Below are positions 4 to 64,000 of a stretch of DNA of 64,000 bases, piece after piece (the first letter of the stretch is position 1; every line of letters starts with the position of its first letter). The notes beneath the pieces were generated by a model. That model searched no databases, had not been told where the DNA came from, and saw only the letters and a program-made list of their open reading frames with translations. The DNA is from Trichoplax adhaerens (Eukaryota > Animalia > Placozoa): positions 3,788,449 through 3,852,448 of the forward strand of contig NW_002060949.1 of NCBI RefSeq assembly GCF_000150275.1, in the 5' to 3' direction. Position numbers and translations under genes: made by a program.

Positions 4-571
4 GCTGCAGCAAGAGTAATTTTGTCTTGTATGGCAGTGGCTACATCAGCTACAGCATTTGCTCTTCACCTATATGGAACAAGAACGAAGATTTCTGTTT
101 ATCTTAGCGCTTTTCTAGCTGTAGGCTTTGTTTGCAGTATGACTAAAACCTCCATTGTAAGTTACGATTGTTGCCGGACTTTGACAACCGAGGTAAAAAG
201 TGTTGACGAATTTCATTTTAAGTTACTATTTTAATTCAGCTGTATTATAAACGCAATATAAATTTATGGTCACTTTCATTCTCGTTCAACATATAAACAT
301 AAAATTTTTCCTTTTGTGACTGTAGGAAGTAAACCGAACTACAGTAGCTCCAGCAGTGAATTATCCTTATTTACAAGTTCCTGTCTTCGTTGAGCCTGTT
401 CCACGATATAGTAATAATACCATCCCTCTTCAAAATCTTCGCTCTCATCATAACGAAAATCCAATTATCGTTAGTTATCCGCAAAGTCATCAATTTCCGA
501 TGTCGCAAACCTATAGCAATAATCCATCGGCTTTCGTTACTTACAAGCCAGCTAATAAAGTGGAAGCTTGA
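4..571 (+). CDS. G1: 3' part (last two exons) of a small multi-pass membrane protein, probable divergent member of the tetraspan cluster; 5' end outside window
   Basis: Exon 4-156 (TAG acceptor 1-3, GTAAGT donor 157) = AAARVILSCMAVATSATAFALHLYGTRTKISVYLSAFLAVGFVCSMTKTSI, two hydrophobic helices. Phase-0 intron, then exon 326-571 (TGTAG acceptor) = P/Y/Q/N-rich tail EVNRTTVAPAVNYPYLQVP...KVEA*. AATAAA at 721. No canonical PPxY, and this exon is shorter (153 nt) than exon 3 of the other loci. Confidence 0.7.
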
Positions 572-2141
572 GCACACGATAGGAGTAAATATTAACAGTT
601 TGTAGAGCAGTTATTAGCAGCAGGGATAAATTTAACGATTCAACAAGACCGAGACAGTAGAATGGTTACTCTTTAATATGACTGGCATATGATTTTTCTA
701 CACTATAAGCCTACCGTATCAATAAATACTTATTTCTTTCTTAGATCAGTCAAATATGCAGCGTACAAACGCTACTGATTACTATATCTCACTTGGTCGC
801 CCATAAAAATAATACTAGACGCACTTCTACTTTGCTTCTTGCTTTAACAGCATTGCATACATATCAATTCAAAAATCATGAAATAGAATAGAACAACTTC
901 TAAAACCTAATCAACAGGGATATTTTCGGTATCAACGATAGCATCAGGTATAATATCTGTATGCTGTATGTATATACATAAAAACATAGTTATCACCTTA
1001 CTATTTCTCCTTAATAAAAACCTACTATACCTGTTCTTTATATATAGCAATATGAATTTATTTCAGAAGATTATAATAAGTTTTTACCGTTTTAAAATGT
1101 AAATACATAAAAATAGTAATAGAATTAACTTTAATTTAAGGTTTAAACTTAACCAGATTAAGATTAAAATAATAAGAAGCAGAGTATTAGATGAATTTTG
1201 TTACTTTCCGTTCTTCAATCGATACTCAGTTTAGATAGTACGTAATACATTTAATACTATAGCAGCTAAAAATTAACAATTTCGACGTTTTGATTTCTTC
1301 TAATTATAAATCAGAGCCTCAGAAGGAGCTTTTTCTAACTGTTATTGCCAATGCCAATTGATTATCTTAATTTGATCTGTTCATATCGAGGCCATTAACA
1401 CGTTTCATACTTCATCTCACTAATTAGTTGGTTTATGGCCGATCTTGATTTAATTTTTCTCACATTGTGACGATGCATTTTTAGTTATTATGATGAATTT
1501 CAAAACTATAAATATAAATTCTAACTCTATTAAACAGTTGATCTGTATACGGATGCCCAATAAAATTTTTAAAACGTTGCGAACAGGCTAATGGCCAAAG
1601 CTGTTATCATACTGTGTAAATCTATAGACTGCAGTAATTTTGCTTTCAATTATTACGTTCGTTCAATTACTATTCTACTCAACGGACTGAAATTCGTTAA
1701 AATATCGAACGAAAAATGAAGTAATAGTTAAGGTATTAGTACATACAGTGCTTTACATCGAAAAATTTCGTCATTCTCTATTTTTTAAAAGCTATTAACG
1801 AGATATTATGGAAGCTTTCTACTTACAGTACTATTATTGTAAAATTTTAATAAACAGCCGTTTATGATACTCCCAGTAATGAATCAAGATGATTATCATT
1901 ATCTGTACTTCAACAAGTAATAGTGGCTGGTTGAATTCGCACATTTTAAGTATGTATTGATATAAAAATAAATTGTTTTACCGTTTATATTTGTATTTGC
2001 AGTACTTATACTACTAGTACATGTATATAAAGAATAATTTTCAAAATTCTATCGATTCACCTTTGCAATCGATCTATAATAATTTATTACCGACGTGACT
2101 TTAAATCTTTGATCATTTCCATATCTACTACGTAAAATAAG

Positions 2142-2191
2142 NNNNNNNNNNNNNNNNNNNNNNNNNNNNNNNNNNNNNNNNNNNNNNNNNN
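2142..2191. other. Assembly gap (50 N); others at 14434-14483, 16001-16050, 31420-31469, 47199-47248
   Basis: Fixed-length N runs. Confidence 1.
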
Positions 2192-6272: not shown

Positions 6273-9259
6273 ATGGAACTCCATGCTAAGCGAAGACTTG
6301 ATCGTAATTTAGGCCAACTTATCCGTTATTCCATCATTCAACTTATATGTGGCATTGCTTGCCTTAGTTGTGCTATCGTTAACTTTGTATTAAATCCACA
6401 GAGTGCACCAAGTTATCAATTGATTTTGCAATGTGTCTCGGCCGGAGTGGTAAGTATTCTTGTAATGTATAGCCAATTCTTCGTAACTAGCTGGTATACT
6501 ATGCATCAACGTATGAAAAACGATAATGGCGATAAAAGCCTTATTTTTGCCCGTAATAGAAAAAAAGTTCAATTATTTTCAATCTCAGACATCATTTTTG
6601 TTAATGATGCCATTGTAAAGGGAAAAAAGTAACAATTTTTCTTATGGATCAATCTTTGAAGCTGCCAATAGCTATTTTATTATTACTTTACATATCTTTT
6701 ACTTGATACCTTTTCTTCTCACTAGTGAATTTTATTGTTATTGGCGACAATGTCCTTCGATAAGTATCTACGGCTATAACGTAAGCGGGTTCAGCATTGA
6801 GGATTAGATATTAATCCCATTGTAATTTAGGTCAATTCTTTTTTTTCCATTCTCATTTTATTTCACTGTACTATCGAGGAATGGCTCTTCCTTTACTATT
6901 TTTCTATTTCTATGATTAGTAAGACAGGACTAAGTGTTAACGGTCATGATGCCGCCATATCGCCTGTTAAATAGCGTATCGTAGTCTGCCTGGTTGTTCT
7001 GTAAATTCGAGCGCCTGGGGGTTTATTTCATTGTTAAATGCTACAATTTTTGAAATTTCCTTCCCAACTTTGATGCCTTTTTATTCTAAAAAATTCTTTA
7101 TTACGATAATAGCCTGTAGCGTATCCTATTTTACGTTAGTTTAATCTAGTGAAATGACTAAAAGAACCAAATTATCAATCACCAAAATAATGCCGTTATC
7201 CTTTGAGAAAATATCCTTCTTTTCAATCATGGGTATGAGTACTCGCCGACGAAATCTAGAAGGGTTAACGTAGAAAGTATTCCTATTGTAAATTAAATCG
7301 ATATAACCACTCTAGATTTAGGCAGGAATAACATTCTTTCCTATATTTTATGCTGTTAGAGTGATTGACGTTCGAGATTTTGCTGGGATTGTGATATCAA
7401 AGCAAGTATTTATATTCCTTTCGCACTATCATCGACCGTAAGCAGATTATTCTTTCTTTTTCGTGATCAAGTGGTCGAGGATTGATGTTAACAACAACAA
7501 TAACCGATTCAGCAACTACGATATCGAATAGAAAATATATCTCGTTGTAGCGAGGGAAATTTTCTGTTTTACAGCGCTAGCCAATTTGTCTACCTTTGAT
7601 TAAGCAAGGGAAACGCAAATAGGATAATACTAAAAAAATCAATAGTAGATTTACAGTCAAAACAAGTCGGTTCATTTTACTTTTATACGACAATCAATTG
7701 ACAATGCATGTGTGTCCTCGATATTAATTACATTAATCTTGTTAGTGATGTTTTTATTCAGATAAATTTACTTCTGGGTTGAAAGTTGTTTAAAAATTCC
7801 AGCCCTTCGTTCTTATTTTTCTATAGGCATTGATTTGCATGCCTATTTACAATAACTAACATCGATCACCGTCGCTTACCATTTTCAACAAGGAAGTTAA
7901 TTAGGACTCATTCTTTGTTTGCTATTTTTTAATCTGTGTATAATCTAATTAAATCGTACATCGTTGATGAAACACTCTTGCATATGCTTCTGACGTGTGT
8001 ATCCTTACCCCTCTACCAGTAATTTGTTGAAGCAAGTTACAGCCATCTCTTGAGAAGCATCATATAAATATATGTTGAATTTTTAGTTGGAATATCGCTA
8101 GATTTAAGTACTTTAGCAACGTATAAAAAAATAATTTATCTGGTTTGACTTGAATTCAATAATATGAAAAATTTCGTTTTCATAACGATTAATAGTTAAG
8201 CGTTTCTGCTGCCATGATATTTGGAGGCTTGTATAAGAGAAGATTTATTCCGTGGATTGCGTATAGGGTAAGAATGTAGATTATGTAGAGAGAAATCAAG
8301 TTACACAATTGATTTCAGTCAAAGACTAGCTTTTAAATTTATTGTCGCCTAGTCTAGAGTAGAACTCCTGTAAAGGAGCTTGCTGCAATAAATTCAGAAT
8401 AAAGTAATAGATTTAATAAAATGATAGAATTGGAAGCATCGATAAGGAGCAACTGGTACAGAATCATTAACACACTGTTAAAATACGACTTAGCCATAAC
8501 TTGGTTTTACCTCTATGGTTGATGGAAAGACGAAGTTACTCTACTCTAACTACAGTGTAAACGTTTGTGTGAAAAGTAAAAGGATGGATATGATATGAAA
8601 TGGCTTTACCGCTACAATTTTGATCAGTTCTTATGTAGCTATTACTGAAATAGGCTATAATAGTATAAGAGACATAAAATATCTGACTAGTGTTACTAAT
8701 TAGCTGCAGCATCCAATTTAATCCATCAGTTTTCAACATTGACCAAGTCTTGCTTGCATTGTAGCTGAAAATAAAGATTTCTTTCGTAATTTTTCCAAGA
8801 GATCATTTATGATCGCAAAGGCTAATTAGCTACTCTTGGTAATATTGTAAAATAAAATTAATGAATTGACGTATTCATTTGCATTAATTCCTTCCTTTAG
8901 CCGTTAACATTTCAAATTTTGAATACTGGACTTAATATCCCACTGTGGATGACCGTAGTTATATCAGCATGGAATTATCCATACCTGTATAATCAATCGT
9001 CAAGATACGCTAATGGAGTATACTTGGGTATCGCTTTCTGCAGTGTTGTTTTATATGGATTAATTACTGGTACACTTAGGCTGAACATGGACGCTTTGAA
9101 GGTAAGCTGGACTAGAACTAATTAGTGTGTAGCAGCGAATCTTGATAGACGAATATCATGGTTAAAACATCATGGAATCATAGTTAAATGATTATTTTTT
9201 CTTTTGGACAGTGTCTAGTGTACTACCTATTATTTCTCTACGATACTAATACAAGTTAG
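6273..9259 (+). CDS. G2: tetraspan-family member, possibly decaying (exon 2 unresolved, very short tail)
   Basis: Exon1 6273-6449 (GCCATGG start, MELHAKRRLDRNLGQLIRYSIIQLICGIACLSCAIVNFVLNPQSAPSYQLILQCVSAGV, GTAAGT). Exon3 8901-9101 (201 nt, PLTFQILNTGLNIPLWMTVVISAWNY...LNMDALK, GTAAGC). Candidate exon4 9212-9259 (CLVYYLLFLYDTNTS*). Best exon-2 candidate 7827-7895 has an in-frame TAA at 7857. Confidence 0.55.
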
Positions 9260-10924
9260 CCTATACCTAGTGGATACTACATGAAAGTATTTATGACCTA
9301 ATCACTTCTCTAAATATAAAACTAGGCAAGCATAGAAGAGTCGAAACCAGTAAATGAGAATGGAACGAAAGAAAGAAGTAGTAGAAGTTCTTATTACGAT
9401 TCCAGTGTTTGATTCAAGCTTTGTTAACGTGTGAATAATTTTTGATAGAGATTAGCTGGCTTCTACCGAAACTTCAATTTTAACTAGTATGAAAATTACA
9501 ATTTGTTACCGCAATAATTACCAAAAAGTTTGGACTACCTTAATGTACAGCAACTGCAATGCTATATTAGACATTTCATTTGTACTTAGTATGTATCGAA
9601 ATATTATCAAATTTACAGACTCTATACCTCCTAATAAGTAATCTGAGCCTAGATGATTCCGTTCAATTTTGTATTATATACTATCAAGATACGAGAGCAT
9701 GGAAATGCAATGTATGCAATTATATGCTTTATTTTATTCCTTTCGACGTTCACGCTGAAATAAGTTTAGCTAATTGGAATTTTAATTTTTGATACCGATA
9801 AAAGTTGTGTAATCAAGGTATTTGTTACTATAAGTATTTCAAATGCAATTATACTTGCTTCAATGAAATATATCAAGTTGTAATCCAGATTTATAGTTAA
9901 CCATATTGTCATTTTTTTTATCCTCCTAAGCTACTGTATCTACAATTTCATTTTCGATGGTTCTGTAGTTGTATATTGGCATATATTTTTACGCCATGAT
10001 GGATACAAGATATTATACTCTATGAAATCGCCCATGAACTATTCGCATTTGTCATCGTAGAATGATCACTTTGACCTTTGTGATAGGCCATCAAGGCTTT
10101 GGTTAATGAATTCATTCCAAGTGTTTTCAATTTTGCCGGTATTAAACTATTTGCGTTCAATAGCTATCCATTATGAAGAGAAAATAAAAGTATTATACAT
10201 ATGAAGCATATTGACCTTTAGGCAATCAAAATGGTTACACTACTTGCACTATGCCTATTCATCATTCTTTATTTATTTCTTTCACATTGGATTTTACTAT
10301 TTGAGTTTATACGTACTTACTGACGTAATATCCAATGTCTGCCTTGGTCTAAGCTAATCGTAGTGAGATATTAAAAGTCTGATAGTATAGGCAACAAATT
10401 AGTATCAATGACCACCTCCGGAGACTTACAGTGGAAAACATAATTTCATAATGCTCTTATTCCAACGGCTATATGTCTGATACATTGGGCTCGTTTTTTT
10501 CAGGTATTTACTTCCATGTATTACTGCAATTATCAGTTTATACAGTCATATACAACATGGGGTTGGAGACATTTGTATTTAAAATTTTATTTGCTTCAAC
10601 ACCATTTATAAATAGATTCAAATTCAGAGATTAGCAGAAACCAAGAACCAGTTAAGGATACATTTTTAGACGGAAGCATTGTGATACAACACTGTCAGAA
10701 ATTGAAGATATCAATAATTGGTTTAAATTATGTAGTATCATATAAATACTTACTTCCTTAGACTTGCTATGTCAGCAGTAAGAGTAGGACTATGTACAGT
10801 ATTGTACTAATAAATTCATTTTAGAAGCATTAAGATATGCGGATGGAAGGTTCAATTTAGTCATACAAATACAAAATACCTTTAGTTTAGCCATTGCTAA
10901 AGCCCCTCCAAAACAAGTATAAAA

Positions 10925-11639: not shown

Positions 11640-14409
11640 TTATCTGACTAAGGCGATGCTAGTATAGTCTGGTGGGGCTGATGCGCGCTCACATTGGTGG
11701 CCATTGTTGACATCATTATATGAAGGTGGCGAAACCCTGCGAAATTGATGATTCCTTATTCTTGCATGCTCGAAACGAGTCGTTGGGGATACCGTTGTTG
11801 TGGCGGCTTGGGTAGATTGTTCAATCCTGCTCATTTGATATGACGTATTTGAAGTTGAATCCTAAATAGTGTTACAATATCTGATTCAATCCAGTTTTTG
11901 ATCGAAATTATTTTATATAATTGAAGTAGGCTCCTTATTAGATATCTATTTCATTTAACAACGACATTTTCAAGTGATCCATATGTGAAACACATGGATC
12001 ACTTTATTAATTAATTATTGAATTACCGGTGCACAGTGTAATGCTTTTTGCAGTATCACATTGCTGGCCCCAACGACGATAATAGCGGCAGTAGCACTCG
12101 TTAGAAACAATATATTAGCAATAAGAAGGCCAATGAAGGATCCAGGTATCGATCTAAAATTCCACGCGGTCAAAACAAGAGCCATAGCAGGCAAAGTAAT
12201 TTGTGCAAGTAGTACTACTTGAAATCGTCTTGGCTGTAGGATATTTTAAGATAGCAAAAAAGTGAGTTTATGCAGTATACTTAATTGGTCTCTCCAAATT
12301 TCTAGTTATCACTACGTTGAGAATCATTAATATAACTAATGAATGAGCAGCAGAATTGCGTTAGCGCTGATCTATTAGATAACCTGGAAAATACTGCAGT
12401 TATTAACTCTACTAATAACATTATCTTCGCCGTAGCTGACATACCTCGTTCAAGAAGAAGCGCAAACGATTTCTTCCAGCAAAAGTAATCAGCATTTGCG
12501 TACTGATGATTACAATCTGAGCAAATATAAAAACAACACCGAAACTGATTAATATAAGCGTGTGTATTTAATTAGAAGAACATCGACAAGTGCCTTGTGA
12601 AATTGCAATACGAATGATAAAATAGACCAAGGCCTCCTAGGAGGTATATTTTAATTTGACAAGACGATCTAATTTCAACAGAAATTGTTTTCTACAAGGC
12701 AAGGGTATACGGTACAACCTACTGTGTCAAAACGCAATTGTGTACGTAAAAACAAGTAAACGGTGTCCAAAATGTGTCCGTTCAGTTGACTGTTGGTATG
12801 AATTGATGGCTTATCACATGTGGAAAATTGTTGGCCTAGTATTATTCATTGCTAACCCTTGGTGTATTTTATCCATTTAGAACGATTGCGTCCAAGAATG
12901 TTATGAAGGAGACTAGTTATCCTGCTTTTGCATAGATGAATTTGATTGAGGTATTGATTCGAAAAGAATACTGTAACGTGAAGTCAAGTAATATATCGTA
13001 GATTGATTAATATAGCTACAATTGAAACTATCTTCATTGTGATCGAGGAGTAAAGTAGGTTGGAGTTTTTACAACTACTTTATTCTGATCAAGCACTCTT
13101 AAGGCAATCAAACAGTGCTATTCAAGTAAAACCTCGACTAATTGTAATGAATCATCACGAGTTGGGATGATAATACTATAATTTGTAGTAGTCTGTGGAA
13201 AACCAATACTAGTATACCATGATAACAGAGCAGAATATATCAACATGACACCCGAACAATAACAACAAGAGGCGCTTGATCGTCAAGGTAAACCGGCAGA
13301 TGAAAGTGCTTGAGGATACGATCGATCCATGGTCAAAGTAGCAAGACTATGGTCATCCTTACGTCGACTAACACTATTTTAATAGGATTCTACCGTAGCG
13401 GTACTACAACAGGTTGATCGATCGAAGAAGAACAGTCCGTGTTGGCAGTTTTCCACGTCGTCCATTCTCTTTCCAATACAATTTCCCTAGTCAATTTAAC
13501 TACTTTATCCTGATCAAGCACTCGTACTTGTGATGAATAATCATCAATTGGGATGATAATACTATAATTTGTAGTAGTCTGTGGAAAACCAATACTAGTA
13601 TACCATGATAACAGAGTAGAATATATCAATATGACACCCAAATAACAACAACAAGAGGCGCTTGATCGTCAAGGTAAACCGACAGATGAAAGTGCTTGAG
13701 GATACGATCGATCGATGGTCATCACTATGTCGACTAGTACTATTTTAATAGGATTCTACCGTAGAGGTACTACAACAGGTTGATCGATCGAAGGAGAACA
13801 GTCCGTGTTGGCAGCTTTCTACGTCGTCCACTCTATTTCTAATTCAATTTCACTCTTGAATTCAACTACTTTATCCTGATCAAGCAAGCACTAGTACTTG
13901 TAATAAATCATCATGAGTTGGGATGATAATACTATACTAGCATACCATGATAACAGAGTAGAATATATCAATATGAAAACCGAACAACAACAACAAGAGG
14001 CGCTTGATCGTCAAGGTAAACCGACAGATGAAAATGCTTGAGGATACGATCGATCGATGGTCATCACTATGTCGACTAGTACTATTTTAATAGGATTCTA
14101 CCGTAGAGGTACTACAACAAGAGAACAGTCCGTGTTGGCAGTTTTCCACGTCGTCCATTCTATTTCCAATACAATTTCCCTCGTCAATTCAACACTACTT
14201 CTACAAGACTTGGACAACTCGACAATATTGCTTACCGCGACAGCAGCGATGTACTGGAAAGCGATCGTGTAATCAAATGTATAGGACAGAAAATCGCACA
14301 TAATCGCACATACTAAACACGTTATTCCAAGGCTTAACATTGCGATACCATATCGAATCGATTGGCGGACGCAGTAATCAAATTGGAGAGCATTGCTACC
14401 CGAATTCAT
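11640..14409 (-). CDS. G3: intact 224-aa tetraspan protein with PPSY and SAPPDY tail motifs
   Basis: Minus-strand exons 14409-14236 (MNSGSNALQFDYCVRQSIRYGIAMLSLGITCLVCAIMCDFLSYTFDYTIAFQYIAAVA), 12516-12445 (72 nt, IVIISTQMLITFAGRNRLRFFLNE), 12233-12027 (207 nt, PRRFQVVLLAQITLPAMALV...QKALHCAP), 11861-11640 (DSTSNTSYQMSR...PPSYND...SAPPDYTSIALVR*). All GT-AG, phase 0. Confidence 0.88.
13075..14190. repeat. Tandem ~345-385 bp repeat (about 3 units) inside G3 intron 1
   Basis: TCAAGGTAAACC and its flanks recur at ~13283, 13668, 14011; the duplicate locus has two units (~17023, 17365). Confidence 0.85.
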
Positions 14410-14483
14410 TGCAAAATGATGCGAAAAGTTGCANNNNNNNNNNNNNNNNNNNNNNNNNNNNNNNNNNNNNNNNNNNNNNNNNN

Positions 14484-16000
14484 GTGAATGCTACATCATA
14501 CTGTCTCCCCATAGTAATCCTTATAAATGGATTGCTTTAGTATTTTTCATTATTCACGCTATATTTCAAGAAGTATTGACTATTAAGTACTAGATCAGTT
14601 TATATGAGAAGTATTTCAAGTTGCTGGCTAAAATTAGTCGATGTTAAACGTTTTAATCGGAAAGATTAGAGTGCGTCAAGAGTTGTGCAATTTTCTTAGT
14701 ATCGTGTAGCAAATACTTCGTATATACTGATATTAAACGTGTAGAATCGCAATACGAAAGTAAAGTGTATCATACTGTTAAGACACTATGTCGATGGAAA
14801 GTGTTCTTTACCAATAGTATCTCCCAATACGAATCCTTATAAATTAATTGCTTTAGTATTTTTCATTATTCACGCCATATTTCTAGAAGTATTGACTATT
14901 AAATACTAGATCAGTTTATATGAGATGTATTTCAAGTTGCTGGCTAAAATTAGTCGATGTTAAACGTTTTAATCGGAAAGATTAGAGTGCGTCAAGAGTT
15001 GTGCGATTTTCTTAGTATAGTGTAACAAGTGCTTAGTGCATGCTGATATTAAACGCCTAACATCGTAATACAAAAAAAAAAGCGTATGATACTGTATAGG
15101 ACACTATATGCTTGCAAAGTCTTCTCTACCAGTTCTATCGCCCAATAGTAATCCTTATAAATTAATTGCTTTAGTATTTTTCATTACTCACGCCATATTT
15201 CTAGAAGTATTGACTATTAAGTACTAGATCAATTTGTATGAGATGTATTTCAAGTTGCTGGCTAAAATTAGACGATGTTAAACGTATTCATCGGAAAGAA
15301 TAGAGTGCGTCAAGAGTTGTGCAATTATCTTAGTATAGTGTAGCAAATGCTTCGTATATGCTGATATTAAACGTGTAGAATTGCAATACGAAAGTAAAGT
15401 GTATCATACTGTTAAGACACTATGTCGATGGAAAGTGATCTTTACCAATAGATTCTCCCAATACTAATCCTTATAAATTAATTGTTATAGTATTTTTCAT
15501 TCCTCACGCAATCTTTCTAGAAATATAGACTATCAAATACTAGATCAGTTTGTATGAGATAGATTTCAAGTTGCTGGCTAAAGTTAGACGATGTTAAACG
15601 TATTCATCGGAAAGATTAGAGTGCGTCAAGAGTTGTGCAATTTTCTTAGTATAGTGTAGCAAATGCTTGATGCATGCTGATATTAAACGTGTAGAATTGC
15701 AATACGAAAGCAAAGTGTATCATACTGTACAGGACACTATATCGATGGAAAGTGTTCTTTACCAGTTCTATCTCCTAATTCTAATCCTTATAAATTAATT
15801 GTTTTAGTATTTTTCATTCCTCACGCCATCATTCTTGAAATATTGACTATCAAATACTAGATCAGTTTGTATGAGATATATTTCAAGTTGCTAGCTAAAG
15901 CTAGACGATGTTCAACGTTTTAATGGGAAAGATTAGAGTGCGTCAAGAGTTGTGCAATTATCTTAGTATAGTGTAGCAAATGCTTCATATATGCTGATAT
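14484..16000. repeat. ~317-bp satellite array, ~4.8 units, bounded by gaps
   Basis: AATCCTTATAAAT at 14516, 14832, 15150, 15466, 15783. Confidence 0.95.
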
Positions 16001-16184
16001 NNNNNNNNNNNNNNNNNNNNNNNNNNNNNNNNNNNNNNNNNNNNNNNNNNCCTACGTTGAGAATCATTAATATAACTAATGAATGAGCAGCAGAATTGCG
16101 TTAGCGCTGATCTATTAGATAACCTGGAAAATACTGCAGTTATTAACTCTACTAATAATATTATCTTCGCCGTAGCTGACGTAC

Positions 16185-17778
16185 CTCGTTCAAGAAGAAG
16201 CGCAAACGATTTCTTCCAGCAAAAGTAATCAGCATTTGCGTACTGATGATTACAATCTGAGCAAATATAAAAACAACACCGAAAATGATTAATATAAGCG
16301 TGTGTATTTAATTAGAAGAACATTGACAAGTGCCTTGTGAAATTGCAATACGAATGATAAAATAGACCAAGGCCTCCTAGGAGGTATATTTTAATTTGAC
16401 AAGACGATCTAATTTCAACAGAAATTGTTTTCCACAAGGCAAGGGTATACGGTACAACCTACTGTGTCTAAACGCAATTGTGTACGTAAAAACAAGTAAA
16501 CGGTGTCCAAAATGTGTCCGTTCAGTTGACTGTTGGTATGAATTGATGGCTTATCACATGTGGAAAATTGTTGGCCTAGTATTATTCATTGCTAACCCTT
16601 GGTGTATTTTATCCATTTAGAACGATTGCGTCCAAGGATGTTATGAAGGAGACTAGTTATCCTACTTTTGCATAGATGAATTTGATTGAGGTATTGATTC
16701 GAAAAGAATACTGTAACGTGAAGTCAAGTAATATATTGTAGATTGATTAATATAGCTACAATTGAAACTATCTTCATTGTGATCGAGGAGTAAAGTAGGT
16801 TGGAGTTTTTACAACTACTTTATTCTGATCAAGTACTCTTAAGGCAATCAAACAGTGCTATTCAAGTAAAATCTCGACTAATTGTAATGAATCATCACGA
16901 GTTGGGATGATAATACTATAATTTGTAGTAGTCTGTGGAAAACCAATACTAGTATACCATGATAACAGAGTAGAATATATCAATATGAAATCTGAACAAT
17001 AACAACAAGAGGCGCTTGATCGTCAAGGTAAACCGACAGATGAAAGTGCTTGAGGATACGATCGATCCATGGTCATCACTATGTCGACTAGTACTATTTT
17101 AATAGGATTCTACCGTAGAGGTACTACAACAGGTTGATCGACCGAAGGAGAACAGTCCGTGTTGGCAGCTTTCTACGTCGTCCACTCTATTTCTAATTCA
17201 ATTTCACTCTTGAATTCAACTACTTTATCCTGATCAAGCAAGCACTAGTACTTGTAATAAATCATCATGAGTTGGGATGATAATACTATACTAGCATACC
17301 ATGATAACAGAGTAGAATATATCAATATGAAAACCGAACAACAACAACAAGAGGCGCTTGATCGTCAAGGTAAACCGACAGATGAAAGTGCTTGAGGATA
17401 CGATCGATCCATGGTCATCACTATGTCGACTAGTACTATTTTAATAGGATTCTAACGTAGAGGTACTACAACAGGTTGATCGATCGAAGGAGAACAGTCC
17501 GTGTTGGCAGTTTTCCACGTCGTCCATTCTATTTCCAATACAATTTCCCTCGTCAATTCAACACTACTTCTACTAGACTTGGACAACTCGACAATATTGC
17601 TTACCGCGACAGCAGCGATGTACTGGAAAGCGATCGTGTAATCAAATGTATAGGACAGAAAATCGCACATAATCGCACATACTAAACACGTTATTCCAAG
17701 GCTTAACATTGCGATACCATATCGAATCGATTGGCGGACGCAGTAATCAAATTGGAGAGCATTGCTACCCGAATTCAT
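16185..17778 (-). CDS. G3': second copy of G3 exons 1-2, truncated by the assembly gap (allele or recent duplicate)
   Basis: Exon1 17778-17605 and exon2 16256-16185 encode the same peptides as G3. Region 16051-19960 mirrors ~12312-16000. Confidence 0.75.
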
Positions 17779-47442: not shown

Positions 47443-49395
47443 ATGGCAGATCAAAGCGCTTCACTGAATCAGCTATTCCGCCAACGTATTGCTGGCTATA
47501 TGAAAGCCATTCTTATCTTTAATAGTTGTAAATTAGCTGCATCTATTGGAGCTCTGGTCTCTGCAGTTTTTATCAGACAAAACTTCCCCATTCTTCCAGC
47601 ATTCTATTACGTATTGCCTTTGGTCGGTGCTTCGGTGGTAAGTGTTGACAATAGCGTAATATTGGTAGTGCCATAGTACTGTACAATAACAGATCTACTA
47701 ACTAAATTCAACTTAAGTCACGAAACTCTTTGGCAAAAGTACAGCACAGTACGAGTATGCACACGGCTTGCTTTTTTTCTGAATTCCACTTCACGTGAAA
47801 TGGAATTGTCCCTTTGTCCTTGGGTTCTATTAACAGTAGAGTACATCATTCGCATTTATATGTTACGTTATTAATTACTTACTTTATTGTGGCTTTATGA
47901 AACGTATCAAACTATCAATAGGAATGATCGCAAAGGGCTCTTTGCTCGGCTTTCACACAGTATGGTACAACACTACATCGGGAACTCTTTGCAATCCTTG
48001 TGAAATATTTTATATTGGTCTGTGCGTGCTTGAAATTCCTTTAATACGGACACAATGCTGGTCTAAATTCCGTGATAGAACGGTTCCCTTTGATGTTTGA
48101 CTTTTATTAATGAGTTTAAGCACTCTCTGAATAAACCCAAAATGGACATTGTTAATTATTTTTTTATAATATTCATATAGACACTAAACCGTTTCCTGTC
48201 CCTGTCTTTCTTTTTAGTAGTTTTTGATATGGATTCAACAGTAACATGATTCTGCTAGTAGTAAATGAAGTAACAGACCAAATTCCATACAAAATACTGG
48301 TCCATCATTAGGATGTGGCAGCCTACTTTGCTGCCTCCAAATATTTCAAGCAAATTGCCACTACTAGGGACTACTCGACTAAAAATTCTCCCCTCAAAGC
48401 CGTAACTAAAAACATTTCCCCTATTCCAAAAATACATTTTACAGTACAGTTGTTGTACTGTACTGTATATGTCATATATTTACAGTACATTACCATCAGA
48501 ATAGATGTGAGCTCATCAAGCAGAGGAATGTTATCGTACAGTTAACAATTGTACTGTACTGTACTGTACACCAGTCGATCTTACCATTTTGAAATTCAGT
48601 CTTTCGTACACCTCGCTGAAACTGCCCTGCCGATGCATTATAGCCACTTACTGTATAGCCCTCTTCATTAAATGGCAATATTTTAAAAAATTTTTCTCGC
48701 AGAGTTGTTACTATCTATTTATCTGTAAGCTATACCATTGGCTGTACGTACTTGACAATATCTAGTATTGATGCAACGTGCAGTTATTACAATTCTCTAA
48801 TATTCATCAACTTTTTTCGTCGATTGGTAATTTTTAGACATTCATCGCTTCAGCCGCTGTTGTTTATATGTTCATTTCGGACGAAAGAAAAGAGCATTTC
48901 ATAAGTAATGTAAGTATGTCAATATATTATGAACTAGCTATTACAACGTTTACATCTAACCGTAAATTGATGTATTTTGCAAATCTGATAGGTAATCCTA
49001 TACCGCATAGGAATTATTGTATGCCAGATACCGTTGGCTGTCGGATTTGGTTTAAACATCTATTTAGTTTCTATTTCTTCTTATGCCTATATACCGTCTA
49101 TTGTGTACCTTGTCTTTTCTGGCCTCATCATATTCTTCCTTGGAATTGGAAGTTCGGTATGCATGCGAAGAGTTTACGCTATCAAATGGGTAAGTCGTTT
49201 TTGATGCGATTGTAGATCAAAACTGTCTTACAGAATTTTAATGGAATTGCGACCATTTTTATGCACATATTTAATATTGTAATCATAATCCCTCCATAGC
49301 TCATGCTGATTAACTCGGCCAGGAATACTGTTCCTGCATCTGCCAATCAATACCCGCCAGGATATGGGTTTAGTACTCCTTCGCCTTCGGTTTAA
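47443..49395 (+). CDS. G7: intact 186-aa tetraspan protein with PPGY tail
   Basis: Exons 47443-47637, 48838-48909 (72 nt, TFIASAAVVYMFISDERKEHFISN), 48992-49189 (198 nt, VILYRIGIIVCQIPLAVGFG...VYAIKW), 49300-49395 (LMLINSARNTVPASANQYPPGYGFSTPSPSV*). All GT-AG, phase 0. Confidence 0.9.
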
Positions 49396-52577: not shown

Positions 52578-52710
52578 GTGTTGCAGTTTTCCAAGTCTTA
52601 TCACATGACTAAACACTAACGACTGTCTGGCATGTTGACTCATCACTTTTTGTGAGTGTTATTTCATAGATCCCGCACTCGCAATGACTAGCCAGGAGTT
52701 GTTGGTGAGC

Positions 52711-54085: not shown

Positions 54086-55958
54086 ATGTCGACGAATAAT
54101 GCTCTGAATCGGAGGCAAGAAGAACTTATCCGCCTTGACCTGCGAAGGATTCACGTCGTCTGTTGGGTCACTGTTGTATGTAACATTGGATCTTTAGCTT
54201 GTTGTTTAATCTACAATATGAACGCTCAATATCCTCGCAACATAGGTATAATTTATGTGGCCATAACTTGTGTAAGTATTGCTTAAAAACCAACGATTAA
54301 TGATTGATAGCTAAATTTATCGGAAGTAAAGAAAGTCGCTTATTACGTACGATAAGTACACGTGTAGAACGAAGTTAAAGTGTGATAAGAAAAAGTGATT
54401 AAAATAGAGATGTCAGTATAGATACGCGTATACGAGGCAATAGACTACTATTTACCTACTGCACTACCGATAGAAAACTAATGGATTCTTCAGTTTCACT
54501 GGATTTGATCTAAAATTTCTTCCTTTAATTTAAAACGAATGATTAAAAATTTACTATATTTGTTAGTGCTTTAGTAGAGTATTCGACTTGTACCGTAGAG
54601 CGAAAGAAGTAAAACTGCTGATAAAGAAAGTACATATAGTCGTATACTGTACGTTGGTGATAGTAGGTGTTAGGCATTGAAGAAAAAATTTGATTAGTGT
54701 GCAATCCCTGATAGGTGTTGTCTGTTATTTTGTTATGTAAACGCTCTCGCTACTCGCTATAATGAGAAAGGGAGTTAGTTTCGATGACATTTTATGAATT
54801 GAAATCTTTGACGGGTACTGTAATTCGTACAGTATGATGAAAATTGAGTAGTCAATGAATGACAGTAATCAACTTTTCACCATGTTCGATAGTCAAGGTT
54901 TCACGAACCACCACATACTTTCAATCGGATCATTACACTTATAGACTTTAATGTAATCATTTAATTAGCTTTACAGCAGTTGTATACTTTAGCGAAGTTA
55001 AAGTTCTTTAGCCTTAACTGATGAGCAAATCAATAGTTGTAAGGCCTTGATGACAATACTTGCTGTACTGTATACAATTTATATACGTATAGGAAAGAAT
55101 TGACTGAGTCATAATGTTATGTTTTTCCATCTTTTTTATAGATATTTCTTCACACAGCAATGCTGATCGTTCTTTGCAACAAAGATGCCGGACCTTTAAT
55201 CATTTCTGCGAATGTAAATGACATCAATTGCTTTAGATATTATTATTTTTATCAAGCATTTTTCTCAGATCCTGTCATTTGCGAATGTACTGTATAATCG
55301 TTTGTTTGTGAGTACTTTTTGATAGCTCATATTTTCATTTTTGACATGCTAGATGAGACGAATATCCGGAATTTCGGGCATTAGTAATATTATGCCTGCT
55401 GTTGCTGTGGTAGCATGTGCAATTAACGTTTCTGGTAGTCGCGGGCCGATAACTACTGCTATGAGTGCCTGTATGATGGCGTTATTTGTTATGATTTTTA
55501 TTACTCAAAATTACTGTGTCAGTATCTTGAAGAAGAGTATTCCAGGCTTTCTGGTTAGTATAAACATGCCAATTGTCAAGATTTAAATACTAGATTCCTC
55601 ACAGTTATTATTATTGTTCTTGCTTGACTGCATTCTACTACTTTAGACTTTAAGAAGATTACGTGTACATGCTGGAGAACGCAGAAGCCGAAATAGGGCG
55701 ACAAACACAAATACTGTTCCTGAAGTTCCAGCTGTATTACCGAGTTATAACCAAGCTACCGGAGCACAGGATGTAACGGAATCTCAAGATCAAGCTACTG
55801 ATCTACCTTGCTACGAAGATGTTTATAACAATAATGACAGCACGAATGTGTCTCAGCCTATTCCACCCAGTTATGACGAGGTTATCGTTAACAATACTCC
55901 TATATCTGACGGTTCTACTAACGGAAATAATTCCACAGCGCGATCCAAAGTAAAATAA
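54086..55958 (+). CDS. G8: intact 256-aa tetraspan protein with three PY motifs (LPSY, LPCY, PPSY)
   Basis: Exons 54086-54271, 55142-55213 (72 nt, IFLHTAMLIVLCNKDAGPLIISAN), 55353-55553 (201 nt), 55647-55958 (TLRRLRV...VLPSYNQ...DLPCYEDV...IPPSYDEV...SKVK*). All GT-AG, phase 0. Confidence 0.9.
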
Positions 55959-60496: not shown

Positions 60497-63400
60497 ATGG
60501 ATGTTGAACTTGGTAGCCAAAATACCAATGATGGTGGAACGAATGGACAAGATGGTCATCGATCGCCGCCTAGCTATAGTAGAGTACGATATGAACAGCA
60601 AAGACACAAGGAAGTCAAGCGTGTTCGTATCCTATCCATCATGGTTTGTGTAATGGGCATTATCCTGGTATTGCTTGTTTTCTTGCATATCGTCTTTACG
60701 AAAACTACAAATTATTTGCCGTTAATGTTCTCATCCGCTGGACTAGTAAGTATCATTACCAAACCATGCTTTCTGCCTCATGACTGCAATTGTCATCATA
60801 GTAGATTTCAAATGGGATAACTTTGTCTTCTACCACATCTTCATTTCGCTTGCAACAAGTTAGATTGCGCTATCTTTTCTAAAAAAAAATAGGGCCACAT
60901 CGTCTTAGTAAACTTGTTTTGACATGTTTTAGTTTGTTACCAACTTTTTTAAATGATTCAACTCTTCATTACTATCGCTTTCATTGATCAATTTTTTCAT
61001 AAGGCCGAACACTTTGTAGATCGCCGTAGTTTCCTTGCGATATACTATAAATCTCCGCTAAAAGCAATATGGAAGTAATATCGCAGCTAGATGTTAAATT
61101 ACTCTACCCTGCTTCTACAAAGGACCATTGAGGCAGCTGCGGTCACGATTACAGAAGTAATGAGTGTCTCTACTCCACCTAGTCCTTGCTAGGTACGAGT
61201 ACTAGTCTATATAGAAATTTCTAGTAGAACGAATTTTTTCAGTACGTATTTCTTAGCCGTAGTAGCCAAGCTAACAAAAATCCAAGTGTTACTATTCGAT
61301 GGCAATTTCATTGCTTACTAGATAAATAGAAAATGGTGCAGAAAATAGTAGATGCTAGATCGGTACGTACTGTAGTATCGGCTAATGCGGTTAAAACGAA
61401 AAATCTCCTCATTTATTTAACATTTCGTGAAATGTTCGATAGTCGCTGCAGCATGCTGTAAGCATTATGACATGGCTATATTGCCAAGAGTCGCCAATTT
61501 TTTGAATCAAATGTATACTTTTTATCATCATTTACTGTGATTATACTGTATTTTACTGCACTATATAGCATCGTAGTTTCGCATGGACTGTCCTGATTTT
61601 GTTAAGCGCTTTGTGTATGATACGATGCGCTAAGCATTTAAATCAACTAGGATCGGAACATAATAATACTGTATTTCTAGTCTGGCACTTTTATATACTG
61701 TATACATGTTACTGACAGATTCTAATCTTTGTAGACTATAAACCGAAGACGTCATTCATTTTTTTTTTTTAATCTGTCTCGACTTAACTAGATAAATTTA
61801 TCGGCACAATCAACTTACGTTAATTATCAACTTTCTCAACTGGATTTAAATGTTCACTTTACGCCTCTACGCTGAATATTAATGCCTATGACTTATAAGC
61901 ACTTATCATCAATAAATTTCAGATCGTTTTCTGCAGCAGCGTTCTAATCTATTCCAGCAGTGTGGAGAATGGAACGAGACTTTTAACATCCCATGTAAGT
62001 CTATTTACAGAATTATTCAAATTACAATACAGTAGTAGTCTGATTGAATACACCGTACACAGATATCTACACCAAGTTGTATAATGTGTTAACGTTTTAG
62101 GTTATTGTTTTGACAGTTGATGTTACTATTTAGTCGCATTGCTAAGTGCTATGTTTAATTAATTGGTTGAGTTAGATCTGGTCGATGTTGCCTTTCTACA
62201 TTAATTTCTCTCTATTACATAATAATAAAAAAATATTTTGCACTGTACTTAATAATATAGTCGTTGGTCCTTGCAAGACTGCAGACAATGTACGGTACTG
62301 CGCGTAAACACATTACTAGATTAGGTTAAGCAGTAGGGGGCACTAAAAGGATAGCAGGCATCGTACTATGGAAATTAATTTTGACCTAATCTGAGCAACC
62401 TCAGAACGTCAATCAAGTCTTTGTTCAATCTCTGACCAATCAGCTTTATGGACGTACAGTACAGGACTGTGATTGTTAGTACAGTACTTTGTAGTTAGAT
62501 TACGTAATGTAGCTTGTAAGTTGTAAACATAGTTGTCACCAATAAAATCATTTTGGTGTAAAATGAAGTAAAATAAATTTAATTTTTTGTTTTGCTCGAT
62601 CTGTTTTGAGCGTACCGTTTACCTATCACTTGTTTGTCTAGTGTAGTAGGAAGAGTTAAGAACAAAGTAAAAAGGAAATATCAGTAATTTTATACAAATT
62701 TCCAAGCACACACTTCAATTCAGTAGCGCTTGCTGAATTTACTCATGTATCAGCGCTGTAGGCTGCCTTGAAGGCTTGAGAAGACACCTGCTCATCCTAA
62801 GGATTCATTTTTTTTAGATACTGTATTGATGTGAATGAATGAATTAATGAAATGACCTTCTCACTCTAGTCATATTAGAACTAATGTACTGGGCTCGGTG
62901 CATACGTCCTGCACAGTACCAGATAATACAGTGCAGTCAGCACCGTACTACTTTATCATATACTGTATAGTAAAATAAAAAAAAACTAATTATTATTTTT
63001 ATATTCGTATTTATTATCTTTTATGTGTTTACTGCCAATTCTGAACTTGAACTCATGTGAAAATGAATCTTGTGTCAAATACTGTACTGTTATGGTTCGT
63101 ACTACGAATTTCGTAGTGTACATTGGCCATAGGGAAGGCGACATTTAAAGTTGTGCGTGGGTTCAACATTTTAACACCCATGTAGCCCTGGTTTCCACAG
63201 TGTTCCACGATAGTTCCCATGAAGAACAATATAGTATCCAGTACTGTCATGAATCACTAGATAACTTTATCAAGTATCTAGTGATCCTTGGTACTGTCTA
63301 CAGTGTCCAGTATTAATTCAAGAGCAGTTGATTATAATTACACGGAAATTGTAGTCTTTCAATGGATACTTTGCAGTGGTCTGCTGAGTCATTTTGCTGC

Positions 63401-64000
63401 ATTCATATTTATATATGCGCTGCTCGATGTACAAATTTGCAATTGAAATTTGTACTAAATGTACTACTTGTAAGATAATTTATAATTATAGAATGGAAAA
63501 TAAATGTTCATTTTATGATCATTGAATACAGAAAAATATTTCGTACTGCTTGTTGGGATGTTGCTGCATTCTATCCTTCGCTACTGGTATTGTGAGTGGA
63601 TTTAATGCCTTCCAAAATAGTATTGGTACATCAATCATTATCAACATTTTCATCTGCTTTTTCAATTTGATGTGCACTTGGGCCATCTATGCCGCTGGCT
63701 ATTCTATTCACCATAATAGAGTGGAAATCACTGTAAGTACTGTACATTGAAGTAAATTGGAGATATTGGTATGAGTGCTTTCCTTGATAGATACTATAGT
63801 TATTATTGATAATTAAGATATACTTAAATTGAACTGACAGAGAGCATCACGATGTGTGCAAAGTTCAACCTTACCTTCTCCACCAAGTTATGACTCCTGC
63901 TTGGCAACTACGGGCACTCCATCACAGACAAATTTGCCGATTTATGTTATAGAAACAGAGATCGTAAAGCTCCCTAACTACGATGAAGCATTGAAAATGA
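60497..64000 (+). CDS. G9: tetraspan protein with N-terminal PPSY and C-terminal PPSY, LPIY, LPNY; runs off the window end
   Basis: Exons 60497-60745, 61923-61994 (72 nt, IVFCSSVLIYSSSVENGTRLLTSH), 63532-63732 (201 nt, KNISYCLLGCCCILSF...RVEIT), 63841->64000 (RASRCVQSSTLPSPPSYDSC...NLPIYVIETEIVKLPNYDEALKM). All GT-AG, phase 0. Confidence 0.88.

What the first reader, a model, noticed from the sequence alone, without database searches (positions are those of the whole stretch)
4..64000. Hidden tandem array of a divergent four-TM gene family with PY-motif tails: candidate receptor or ubiquitin-ligase adaptor repertoire
Seen: nine loci plus two duplicate copies that appear only after splicing. 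Protein similarity between most loci is very low, yet the architecture is fixed: exon1 = basic N-terminus + TM1 + short loop + start of TM2; exon2 = exactly 72 nt in all seven loci where it is resolved; exon3 = 195-207 nt (TM3-loop-TM4; 153 nt in G1); exon4 = disordered tail; every intron phase 0. Seven loci carry PPxY/LPxY motifs. Established: PPxY/LPxY bind WW domains of NEDD4-family HECT ligases; LAPTM4/5 and ENTREP/FAM189 are membrane proteins with such tails; vertebrate MS4A genes form a tandem tetraspan cluster, some acting as chemosensors in mouse necklace olfactory neurons. Inference: G2 TM1 (IIQLICGIACLSCAI) and G4/G6 TM2 (IPFIGS/VPFIGC) echo MS4A motifs (QIxxG, YPFWG). This may be a lineage-specific MS4A/CD20-like expansion coupling variable membrane recognition surfaces to one conserved ubiquitination/endosomal output.
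Basis: partly seen in the sequence, partly recalled or inferred. Interest (0 to 1): 0.88.

Follow-up and report, generated by a model that had tools for sequence, protein, structure and literature searches.

The report
Placozoan tetraspan gene cluster, PY tails
This stretch of the Trichoplax adhaerens genome holds a real tandem cluster of small four-helix membrane protein genes found only in placozoans. Their cytoplasmic tails carry far more ubiquitin-ligase docking (PPxY/LPxY) motifs than chance allows. Most of the genes already have database models, and the proposed CD20/MS4A kinship is not supported by any test I could run.

Summary
The window (T. adhaerens Triad1, C1408:3788449-3852448) carries eight genes (G2-G9) built the same way. 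Exon 1 covers the N-terminus, TM1 and half of TM2. Exon 2 is exactly 72 nt. Exon 3 (195-207 nt) covers TM3, a loop and TM4. Exon 4 is a disordered tail. All introns are phase 0. A ninth member (G10) lies 2.8 kb past the window.

Database proteins reproduce my models for G2, G3, G4, G7 and G8. RNA-run contigs show the predicted junctions of G9 (exon 3-4) and G10 (all three). Profile tests unite G2-G10 (hhalign P 8.6e-9). G1 is not recognisably related.

The two "duplicate copies" sit at assembly gaps, and Trichoplax sp. H2 lacks them, so they are probably haplotypes assembled twice. In this assembly G5 (20-nt deletion in exon 1) and the G4 tail (2-nt deletion) are broken relative to H2.

The tails hold 15 [L/P]PxY motifs against 0.68 expected, and the charge distribution places them in the cytosol. 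The genome encodes WW-HECT ligases.

No homologue appears outside placozoans. Pfam CD20 detects real Trichoplax CD20-like exons but none of these. Fold matches are unspecific.

Best reading: an orphan tetraspan family that docks NEDD4-type ligases. Earlier scan notes concern this same window only.

The parts
4..571 (+). G1 (TRIADDRAFT_58213), exon 3-like 4-156 and tail exon 326-571; exon 1 lies 1.2-1.4 kb upstream of the window. Doubtful member.
   Evidence: The database model P0007 joins exon 1 directly to 4-156, with no 72-nt exon. The family profile does not recognise it, z 0.4. No [L/P]PxY motif.
6273..9412 (+). G2: exons 6273-6449, 8196-8267 (72 nt), 8901-9101, 9326-9412. Short 28-residue tail without a PY motif.
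   Evidence: My exons 1-3 equal TrispH2_000678 (P0011, 178 aa). Exon 4 was located from that protein.
11640..14409 (-). G3: exons 14409-14236, 12516-12445 (72 nt), 12233-12027, 11861-11640. Tail has PPSY and PPDY.
   Evidence: The model equals TRIADDRAFT_58215 (P0006, 224 aa).
16052..17811 (-). Second copy of G3 exon 2 (16256-16185) and exon 1 (17778-17605) only. Probably a redundant haplotype or assembly duplicate.
   Evidence: It is bounded by the gap at 16001-16050. The exon stretches are 99-100% identical to the first copy. The Trichoplax sp. H2 locus has one copy.
22317..25318 (+). G4: exons 22317-22505, 23592-23663 (72 nt), 24742-24948, and a tail from 25033. In this assembly a 2-nt deletion at about 25122 shifts the frame. 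PPNY is kept and the distal PPTY is lost unless the deletion is an error.
   Evidence: Exons 1-3 equal TrispH2_000680 (P0001, 249 aa). H1/H2 DNA alignment. No T. adhaerens model was found.
30762..33974 (+). G5: exon 1 at about 30762-30957 carries a 20-nt deletion (frameshift in TM1). Other exons: 33422-33493 (72 nt), 33576-33770, 33879-33974 (PPGY). Probably broken in this strain.
   Evidence: Alignments with G7 and with the intact H2 copy. TRIADDRAFT_58216 (P0005) reads through the shifted frame. The sequence after the gap at 31420-31469 lacks exon 1 altogether.
38155..40418 (+). G6: exons 38155-38352, 38945-39016 (72 nt), 39747-39950 (or from 39663, as in the database models), 40179-40418 (PPPY followed by an acidic run).
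   Evidence: TrispH2_000682 (P0010, 265 aa) and the partial TRIADDRAFT_58217 (P0002). Which exon-3 acceptor is used is not resolved.
45608..49395 (+). G7: exon 1 at 45608-45802 (variant a) or 47443-47637 (variant b), then 48838-48909 (72 nt), 48992-49189, 49300-49395 (PPGY).
   Evidence: TRIADDRAFT_64090, named 'expressed protein' (P0013, 186 aa), equals the variant-a model. The first copy ends 23 nt into exon-2 sequence at the gap 47199-47248. H2 contig 40 has a single exon 1. H2 holds variant a on a separate 2256-bp contig.
54086..55958 (+). G8: exons 54086-54271, 55142-55213 (72 nt), 55353-55553, 55647-55958. Tail has LPSY, LPCY and PPSY.
   Evidence: The model equals TRIADDRAFT_58219 (P0008, 256 aa).
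60497..64000 (+). G9: exons 60497-60745 (PPSY also in the N-terminus), 61923-61994 (72 nt), 63532-63732, and 63841 to the stop at 64006-64008, just past the window. Tail has PPSY, LPIY and LPNY.
   Evidence: RNA-run contigs join 63732 to 63841 (GT..AG), and a contig ends in poly(A) about 1.07 kb past the window end. H2 calls a 229-aa gene at the orthologous place, the length of my model. I found no T. adhaerens protein for it.
14463..20072 (.). Two arrays of a ~316-nt satellite (14463-16029 and 18112-20072) that flank the duplicated G3 5' part.
   Evidence: Repeat families D1 and D2. H2 has one array.

Best explanation
G2-G9, plus G10 just downstream, form a placozoan-restricted tandem family of small (about 180-260 residue) membrane proteins with four transmembrane helices.

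The N-terminus, the TM2-TM3 loop and the C-terminal tail face the cytosol. The two outer loops are very short.

The conserved functional element is the disordered tail. In all members but G2 it carries one to three [L/P]PxY motifs, often in the form PPxYx[D/E]V.

Inferred mechanism:
- The motifs dock the WW domains of NEDD4-type HECT ubiquitin ligases, which this genome encodes.
- The proteins would therefore be ubiquitinated and sorted through the endocytic pathway.
- They would act either as membrane adaptors or activators that bring the ligase to neighbouring cargo (as NDFIP, LAPTM and ENTREP do), or as cargo whose own surface level is set this way (as in ENaC).

Shown here: gene structures, family unity, motif enrichment, predicted topology, presence of the ligases, and expression and splicing of G9 and G10.

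Inferred only: WW binding, ubiquitination and the adaptor role.
For: - Shared exon architecture with a 72-nt exon 2 in nine loci.
- Models reproduced by database proteins and by RNA-run junctions.
- Family homology: pairwise z up to 49, leave-subfamily-out z 2.9-9.9, hhalign probability 95.7% with P 8.6e-9.
- AlphaFold2 model of P0001: four long helices with core pLDDT 65-79, then a disordered tail.
- K+R counts: N-terminus 34, loop 1 3, loop 2 25, loop 3 6, tail start 31.
- 15 [L/P]PxY motifs in eight tails against 0.68 expected, 0 of 2000 shuffles.
- Three loci with WW domains next to a HECT domain on the same strand: C1411 5476394-5479626, C1412 3178355-3181793, C1413 5706394-5708835.
- PPxY-dependent ITCH binding by a membrane protein is documented for ENTREP (PMC8811627).
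Against: - No binding, ubiquitination or localisation data exist.
- G2 has no PY motif.
- PY motifs also bind the WW domains of non-ligase proteins.
- The topology rests on the positive-inside rule and a medium-confidence model built from a thin alignment (8 rows).
- Expression is shown only for G9 and G10 here, and by the database name 'expressed protein' for G7.
- Two members are frame-disrupted in this assembly, so the family may be under weak constraint.
Confidence: 0.55

Rival explanations
1. The family is a very divergent, lineage-specific branch of the CD20-like/MS4A superfamily. Its members would act like MS4A proteins, as membrane receptor subunits, channels or chemosensors. The PY tail would only tune their turnover.
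For: - Same four-helix topology.
- Real CD20-like genes of the same genome share the intron logic: exon 1 ends in mid-TM2 in phase 0, a short phase-0 exon 2 (57 nt against 72 nt) follows, and exon 3 encodes TM3, a loop and TM4.
- The top Foldseek rows are Fc epsilon RI beta (MS4A2), at E 0.2.
- VIA-align lists sarcospan (Z 11.4) and Fc epsilon RI beta (Z 9.5).
- A CD20/ENTREP cluster appears among the weak ESM Atlas neighbours of G4.
Against: - PF04103 finds no member at E<=10, but does find exon 1 of the real Trichoplax CD20-like genes.
- Profile and hhalign comparisons with those genes are at noise level, P 0.15, equal to reversed controls.
- Fold scores lie in the range the tool itself calls unspecific for helical bundles. 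TTYH1 and synaptophysin score higher.
- For G8 the nearest named Atlas cluster is LAPTM5, not CD20.
- The outer loops are only 5-14 residues long.
Confidence: 0.25
2. The PY tails recruit WW-domain proteins other than NEDD4-type ligases, such as a YAP/Yorkie, WWOX or MAGI/KIBRA-type protein. The family would then tether signalling proteins at membranes rather than drive ubiquitination.
For: The genome has WW-domain loci that are not next to a HECT domain, for example two tandem WW domains in one frame at C1407 2773879-2774127. PPxY is the general class-I WW ligand (established knowledge).
Against: Known small multi-pass membrane proteins with several PY motifs (NDFIP, LAPTM, ENTREP; established knowledge and PMC8811627) work with NEDD4-family ligases. 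Several motifs here also fit the tyrosine-based sorting pattern YxxV, which points to endocytic sorting.
Confidence: 0.1
3. The genes are fast-evolving orphan genes of little or no function, and the PY motifs are a by-product of Pro/Tyr-rich low-complexity tails.
For: - No homologues outside placozoans.
- G5 and the G4 tail are frame-disrupted in this assembly.
- Paralogues are very divergent.
Against: - Motif enrichment of 15 against 0.68 holds after controlling for composition.
- Exon structure and reading frames are kept in nine paralogues.
- H1/H2 orthologues are almost identical, with few nonsynonymous changes except in G7.
- G9 and G10 are spliced and polyadenylated.
Confidence: 0.05

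Closest known systems
CD20-like / MS4A family (Pfam PF04103), including Fc epsilon RI beta and sarcospan
   Same: - Four TM helices with both ends in the cytosol.
- Tandem gene clusters.
- Same intron logic as the real CD20-like genes of this genome.
- Best, though non-significant, Foldseek rows.
   Different: - No HMM match and no profile-profile similarity.
- The TM1/TM2 signature seen in the real Trichoplax CD20-like exons (..LG..Q/H I..G.., APIWSG) is absent from G2-G10.
- PY-rich tails are not a general MS4A feature (my own knowledge).
LAPTM4A/4B/5 (Pfam PF03821, Mtp)
   Same: - Four-TM proteins with C-terminal cytosolic PY motifs that bind NEDD4-family ligases (established knowledge).
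- LAPTM5 is the nearest named ESM Atlas cluster for G8, at a weak score of 0.82.
   Different: No PF03821 match in the proteins or in the window. The loops here are much shorter.
NDFIP1/NDFIP2
   Same: Small multi-pass membrane proteins whose PPxY motifs recruit and activate NEDD4-family ligases (PMC8811627 discussion).
   Different: NDFIP proteins have three TM helices and N-terminal PY motifs. No sequence similarity was found.
ENTREP / FAM189 family
   Same: Membrane proteins with two or more cytosolic PPxY motifs that bind ITCH and promote endocytosis of a cargo receptor (PMC8811627). A CD20/ENTREP_C cluster is a weak structural neighbour of G4.
   Different: Those proteins are much longer (450-650 residues) and carry a recognisable CD20-like domain and the ENTREP_C domain. 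Neither domain is detected here.
Extended PY motif of ENaC subunits (PPPxYxxL)
   Same: Several tails here have [L/P]PxYxxV: PPSYNDV, PPTYTDV, LPCYEDV, PPSYDEV. That is a PY motif overlapping a YxxPhi sorting signal, as in ENaC (my own knowledge of ENaC).
   Different: ENaC is an unrelated two-TM channel. The similarity concerns the motif only.

Membership tests
CD20-like / MS4A (PF04103) | Match to the Pfam CD20 profile | tested here: not met
   No PF04103 hit at E<=10 for P0001, P0004, P0006, P0007, P0008, P0002, P0003 or P0005, nor for single exons. A six-frame scan of the genome gives no hit in the window. Positive control: exon 1 of two real CD20-like genes (L008) hits at E 2e-4 and 2e-3.
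CD20-like / MS4A (PF04103) | Sequence or profile similarity to undoubted members of the same genome | tested here: not met
   Family HMM against CD20-like genes A and B: z 0.8-0.9. The reverse comparison gives z <= 2.2. hhalign gives P 0.15, equal to reversed controls. Both profiles are thin.
CD20-like / MS4A (PF04103) | Four TM helices, N- and C-termini cytosolic | tested here: met
   AlphaFold2 helices at 7-45, 51-76, 88-115 and 121-158 of P0001. The K+R distribution puts 90 charges inside and 9 outside. These are predictions, not measurements.
CD20-like / MS4A (PF04103) | Fold match to solved MS4A structures that stands out from other four-helix membrane proteins | tested here: inconclusive
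   Foldseek: Fc epsilon RI beta on top, but at E 0.2. VIA-align: TTYH1 Z 13.6, synaptophysin 12.3, sarcospan 11.4, Fc epsilon RI beta 9.5. All lie in the range the tool calls common for helical bundles.
CD20-like / MS4A (PF04103) | Shared intron positions and phases with CD20-like genes (supporting, not defining) | tested here: met
   Trichoplax CD20-like genes at C1409:5090-5097 kb have exon 1 ending in mid-TM2 in phase 0, a 57-nt exon 2, and an exon 3 with TM3, a loop and TM4. I did not compare with vertebrate MS4A genes.
LAPTM (PF03821, Mtp) | Match to the Mtp profile | tested here: not met
   No hit in any protein. The genome scan finds one weak hit, elsewhere on the contig.
LAPTM (PF03821, Mtp) | Four TM helices plus C-terminal PY motifs | tested here: met
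   This is a functional resemblance only.
NDFIP1/2 | Three TM helices with N-terminal PPxY motifs | tested here: not met
   Four helices are predicted and the motifs are C-terminal. Only G9 has an extra N-terminal PPSY.
ENTREP / FAM189 | CD20-like domain plus ENTREP_C domain | tested here: not met
   No Pfam domain was detected. The proteins are 178-265 residues long.
Class-I WW-domain ligands (PY-motif proteins) | [L/P]PxY motifs present beyond chance in a cytosolic, disordered segment | tested here: met
   15 motifs against 0.68 expected, 0 of 2000 shuffles. Tail pLDDT is below 50. A cytosolic location follows from the charge bias.
Class-I WW-domain ligands (PY-motif proteins) | Physical binding to a WW domain | not testable with these tools
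   This needs a pulldown, ITC or two-hybrid experiment. The one complex prediction gave no verdict (see Tried and rejected).

The most novel reading that the evidence does not exclude
The cluster is a placozoan-specific, polymorphic surface-recognition repertoire, descended from CD20-like genes, wired to a common NEDD4/endocytic output.

Its short outer loops and its TM3-loop-TM4 exon would diversify under selection. Three observations fit this:
- G5 and G7 exon 3 are 71% identical, while the flanking introns are 89-93% identical.
- The two G7 exon-1 variants differ only in outer loop 1.
- Both variants are present in H1 and in H2.
Probability: 0.12. Interest if true: 0.8.

Novelty: new variant of a known kind. 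Interest (0 to 1): 0.45.

Why it matters
Placozoans are among the simplest animals, and how their few cell types regulate membrane proteins is poorly known. If the reading is right, NEDD4-type ligases had already been coupled to a lineage-specific set of small tetraspan PY-motif proteins in this phylum. This would have arisen independently of, or very remotely related to, the NDFIP, LAPTM and ENTREP adaptors of bilaterians.

The family has no Pfam model. The library search for six of its gene identifiers found no paper. Defining it gives a concrete, testable entry point: tail peptides against placozoan WW domains.

It also corrects gene models. G9 has no T. adhaerens model, G10 has no model that I could find, G2 and G6 are partial, and the G6 exon-3 acceptor is unresolved.

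The work also flags assembly artefacts at three gaps.

The signs of exon-specific and allele-specific divergence would matter more if they hold up.

Tried and rejected
1. A composite alignment of one full-length protein with single-exon rows (A2). MAFFT misplaced the divergent exons, so I did not use it.

2. Spliced models were never sent to any search tool as joined sequence. Searches used single exons by reference, read-through open frames by reference, or database protein ids. Joined exon translations were built only inside local scripts, from window.fa and the loci, for pairwise, leave-one-out and hhalign statistics among the cluster's own genes.

3. A full-length search with P0001 found only itself. 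The third protein search, meant to fetch CD20-like proteins for a deeper profile, returned one unnamed Logan protein without a Pfam match. The CD20 comparison therefore rests on two same-genome genes that I modelled myself.

4. The profile of A4 against PDB sequences gave nothing.

5. The second AlphaFold2 job (P0008) reached only pLDDT 48.8. It showed the same helix order but was too poor for a fold search.

6. The ESM Atlas neighbours are weak and inconsistent: CD20/ENTREP for G4, LAPTM5/DUF4728/MARVEL-like for G8. I treated them as leads only.

7. Complex prediction of a WW domain of the C1411 WW-HECT locus with the G8 PPSY segment gave 'no answer' (score 0.13, mark 0.34). This is no evidence either way.

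8. Paper searches for six of the gene identifiers, and for Trichoplax with CD20/MS4A, found nothing relevant.

9. H1/H2 dN/dS has too few differences to test selection.

Full report
**Identity of the window.** Composition (about 33% G+C), introns and database hits show an animal genome. The window is G000:C1408:3788449-3852448 of a 105.6-Mb, 1414-contig assembly. Proteins encoded here are named TRIADDRAFT_58213 to 58219 and 64090 of Trichoplax adhaerens. Earlier scan notes had already named the species. The closest other genome is Trichoplax sp. H2, whose loci I fetched as L005 and L009.

**Checking the observation.** I worked from six-frame translations, hydropathy, and a scan for phase-0 exons bounded by AG and GT.
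Coordinates are in the parts list.
- Exon 2 is exactly 72 nt in all eight. Exon 3 is 195-207 nt. The introns of all models are phase 0, and most donors read gtaagt.
- A ninth member, G10, lies 2.8-5.7 kb past the window end (L002: 2829-3047, 4291-4362, 4711-4908, 5423-5695).

**The models are not only my construction.**
- A search with a read-through open frame of G4 exon 1 returned TrispH2_000680 (P0001). Its sequence reproduces my exon 1/2/3 joins exactly.
- An exhaustive HMMER search of 1.84 billion representative proteins, using a profile of the ten exon-3 translations (A3), returned nine proteins at E<=0.001. Eight belong to T. adhaerens or Trichoplax sp. H2 clusters; the ninth (P0009) is an unnamed Logan protein that resembles G1.
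- Among those hits are G3 (224 aa) and G8 (256 aa), identical to my models. Cluster look-up added G7 (186 aa, 'expressed protein'), identical to my model, and full-length H2 models of G2 and G6.
- H2 also calls a 229-aa gene at the place orthologous to G9, which is the length of my model.
- So the genes are largely annotated, as uncharacterised proteins. What was 'hidden' is that they form one family.

**RNA evidence.** I laid contigs of four public runs on 6 kb spanning the end of G9 and all of G10 (L006 coordinate = window coordinate minus 60400). Two of the runs are on record as RNA.
- Three runs show GT..AG joints at 3332>3441 (G9 exon 3-4), 6638>7882 and 7953>8302 (G10 exons 1-2 and 2-3), exactly as predicted.
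- They also show a joint at 8498>9013 for G10 exons 3-4. This is one base left of my prediction and gives the same codon and phase. A synonymous A/G difference at the last exon base would explain it.
- A fourth run has a contig ending in a poly(A) run at L006:4675, about 1.07 kb past the G9 stop codon.
- The junctions of G2-G8 were not tested with reads, because only one call was allowed.

**Is it one family?** Pairwise similarity is clear within G4/G5/G6/G7 (z 8-49) and G2/G3 (z 13), with a G3-G6 link (z 7.7). It is not detectable for G8, G9 or G1.
- Profiles built without the tested subfamily still recognise every member of G2-G10. Against within-exon shuffles, z is 4.1-14.7. Against a stricter null that shuffles only within 8-residue windows, and so keeps the hydropathy profile, z is 2.9-9.9. 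The weakest are G7 (7 of 400) and G9 (3 of 400).
- hhalign of G2/3/4/6/7 against G8/9/10 gives probability 95.7% and P 8.6e-9 over 96 columns.
- G1 is not recognised (z 0.4), and its gene model has no 72-nt exon. I do not count it as a member.
- Genome-wide six-frame searches with the full-length alignment (A4) and with the exon-3 profile (A3) hit only this cluster. The next-best hits have E above 0.5.

**Gaps and 'duplicates'.** No gap lies inside an exon.
- The second copy of G3 exon 2 and exon 1 (16052-17811) and the two G7 exon 1s (45608-45802 and 47443-47637) both abut N gaps.
- The first G7 copy runs 23 nt into exon-2 sequence and then stops at the gap.
- H2 has a single G3 5' end and a single satellite array.
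- On its contig 40, H2 has a single G7 exon 1 preceded by the sequence that in H1 precedes copy a.
- H2 carries the other exon-1 variant on a separate 2256-bp contig, together with exon 2. That fits an allele better than a tandem copy.
- I therefore read both 'duplicates' as two haplotypes assembled one after the other. A real strain-specific duplication is not excluded.
- Around the gap at 31420-31469, the flanks repeat 300 nt exactly. The post-gap version joins sequence upstream of the G5 start directly to intron 1, so it lacks exon 1.

**Broken copies.**
- Relative to H2, G5 exon 1 in this assembly lacks 20 nt inside TM1. The T. adhaerens model simply reads through the shifted frame (P0005).
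- The G4 tail lacks 2 nt at about 25122. The frame from 25033 then ends after 38 residues, keeping PPNY but losing the distal PPTY.
- These may be real strain differences or assembly errors.

**Protein features.**
- AlphaFold2 on P0001, with an eight-row alignment, gives four long helices (core pLDDT 65-79) and a disordered tail.
- Lys+Arg counts over eight members are 34 (N-terminus), 3 (loop 1), 25 (loop 2), 6 (loop 3) and 31 (first 25 tail residues). By the positive-inside rule, both ends and loop 2 are cytosolic. The outer loops are 5-14 residues long.
- The eight tails contain 15 [L/P]PxY motifs against 0.68 expected from composition-preserving shuffles, with 0 of 2000 shuffles reaching 15. 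Only G2 has none.
- Several motifs read [L/P]PxYxxV or are followed by acidic residues.
- The genome has at least three loci where WW domains are followed by a HECT domain on the same strand. That is the NEDD4-family arrangement.

**What it is not shown to be.**
- No Pfam family matches any member at E<=10.
- PF04103 (CD20) detects exon 1 of two real CD20-like genes of this genome at E 2e-4 and 2e-3. It detects nothing in the cluster.
- HMM and hhalign comparisons between the family and those two genes are at noise level.
- Foldseek puts Fc epsilon RI beta (MS4A2) on top, but at E 0.2. VIA-align ranks TTYH1, synaptophysin, designed bundles and sarcospan similarly, within the range the tool calls unspecific for helical bundles.
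- ESM Atlas neighbours are weak and differ between G4 and G8.
- PF03821 (LAPTM) is also negative.
- The one positive hint for CD20 ancestry is gene structure. The real CD20-like genes also end exon 1 in mid-TM2 in phase 0, have a short phase-0 exon 2 (57 nt), and encode TM3, a loop and TM4 in exon 3.

**Explanation.** I commit to an orphan, placozoan-restricted tetraspan family whose selected feature is a cytosolic PY tail. The tail would dock NEDD4-type WW-HECT ligases and so route the protein, and probably associated cargo, into ubiquitin-dependent endocytic sorting. This is functionally like NDFIP, LAPTM and ENTREP (PMC8811627). Binding and ubiquitination are inferred, not shown. A CD20-like origin remains possible, at about one in four. 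The 'receptor repertoire' reading is speculative, but it is not excluded by the exon-3 and loop-1 divergence patterns.

**Limits.**
- Joined spliced sequences were not sent to search tools.
- Full-length tests used database proteins of five to seven loci.
- The CD20 comparison uses two self-modelled genes.
- No genome of a distant placozoan could be searched.

Noticed in passing
window 33422-33974 versus 48838-49395: Between the paralogues G5 and G7, exon 3 (TM3-loop-TM4) is only 71% identical. Exon 2 is 92% identical and the two flanking introns are 93% and 89%. The coding exon has therefore diverged far more than the non-coding DNA beside it.
   Followed up: partly
window 45608-45802 and 47443-47637: The two G7 exon-1 variants differ by a cluster of about 12 substitutions within about 40 nt. 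These change six residues of outer loop 1 and nothing else. Both variants also occur in Trichoplax sp. H2, as TrispH2_004456 and TrispH2_012136. H1/H2 G7 orthologues show 6 nonsynonymous and 2 synonymous differences, while the other genes show 0-1 nonsynonymous.
   Followed up: partly
window 14463-16029 and 18112-20072: Two arrays of five to six copies of a ~316-nt satellite (76-96% identical to the reference copy) lie between G3 and G4. H2 has one array.
   Followed up: partly
window 41271-42649 and 50639-51886: A ~1.3-kb block is repeated at 100% identity, 9.36 kb apart, once between G6 and G7 and once between G7 and G8. In the H2 locus L009, positions 3659-5023 align to both H1 copies. It may be a mobile element or a recent duplication.
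   Followed up: no
window 30240-30557, 52390-53800, 59850-59950: Simple repeats rich in TACAGTAC-like units give long spurious open frames made of YSTV/LYCTV runs on both strands.
   Followed up: no
L008 (G000:C1409:5088000-5097000): 2391-2564, 2741-2797, 3007-3252; 6688-6873, 8440-8496, 8622-: Two adjacent real CD20-like genes (PF04103 on exon 1) have a 57-nt phase-0 exon 2 and the same exon logic as the cluster genes. A third CD20-like exon lies at C1408:3618838-3618963.
   Followed up: partly
L006:6994-7150 (G10 intron 1, about 3.0-3.15 kb past the window end): Contigs of three runs skip 155 nt with GT..GC ends inside the intron. The depth there equals intronic background, so this looks like an indel polymorphism rather than splicing.
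   Followed up: no
L003:4693-4956 and L001:9757-9957 (upstream of the window): Upstream of G1 lie a small single-pass membrane ORF (also noted earlier by the scan) and an exon with two hydrophobic helices. Neither is hit by the family profiles.
   Followed up: no
window 31470-31587 joined to 31585 onward: The sequence after the gap in G5 intron 1 equals H2 sequence from upstream of the G5 start joined to intron 1. It skips the 407 nt that hold exon 1. It is either a second, exon-1-deleted G5 haplotype or a misjoin.
   Followed up: partly
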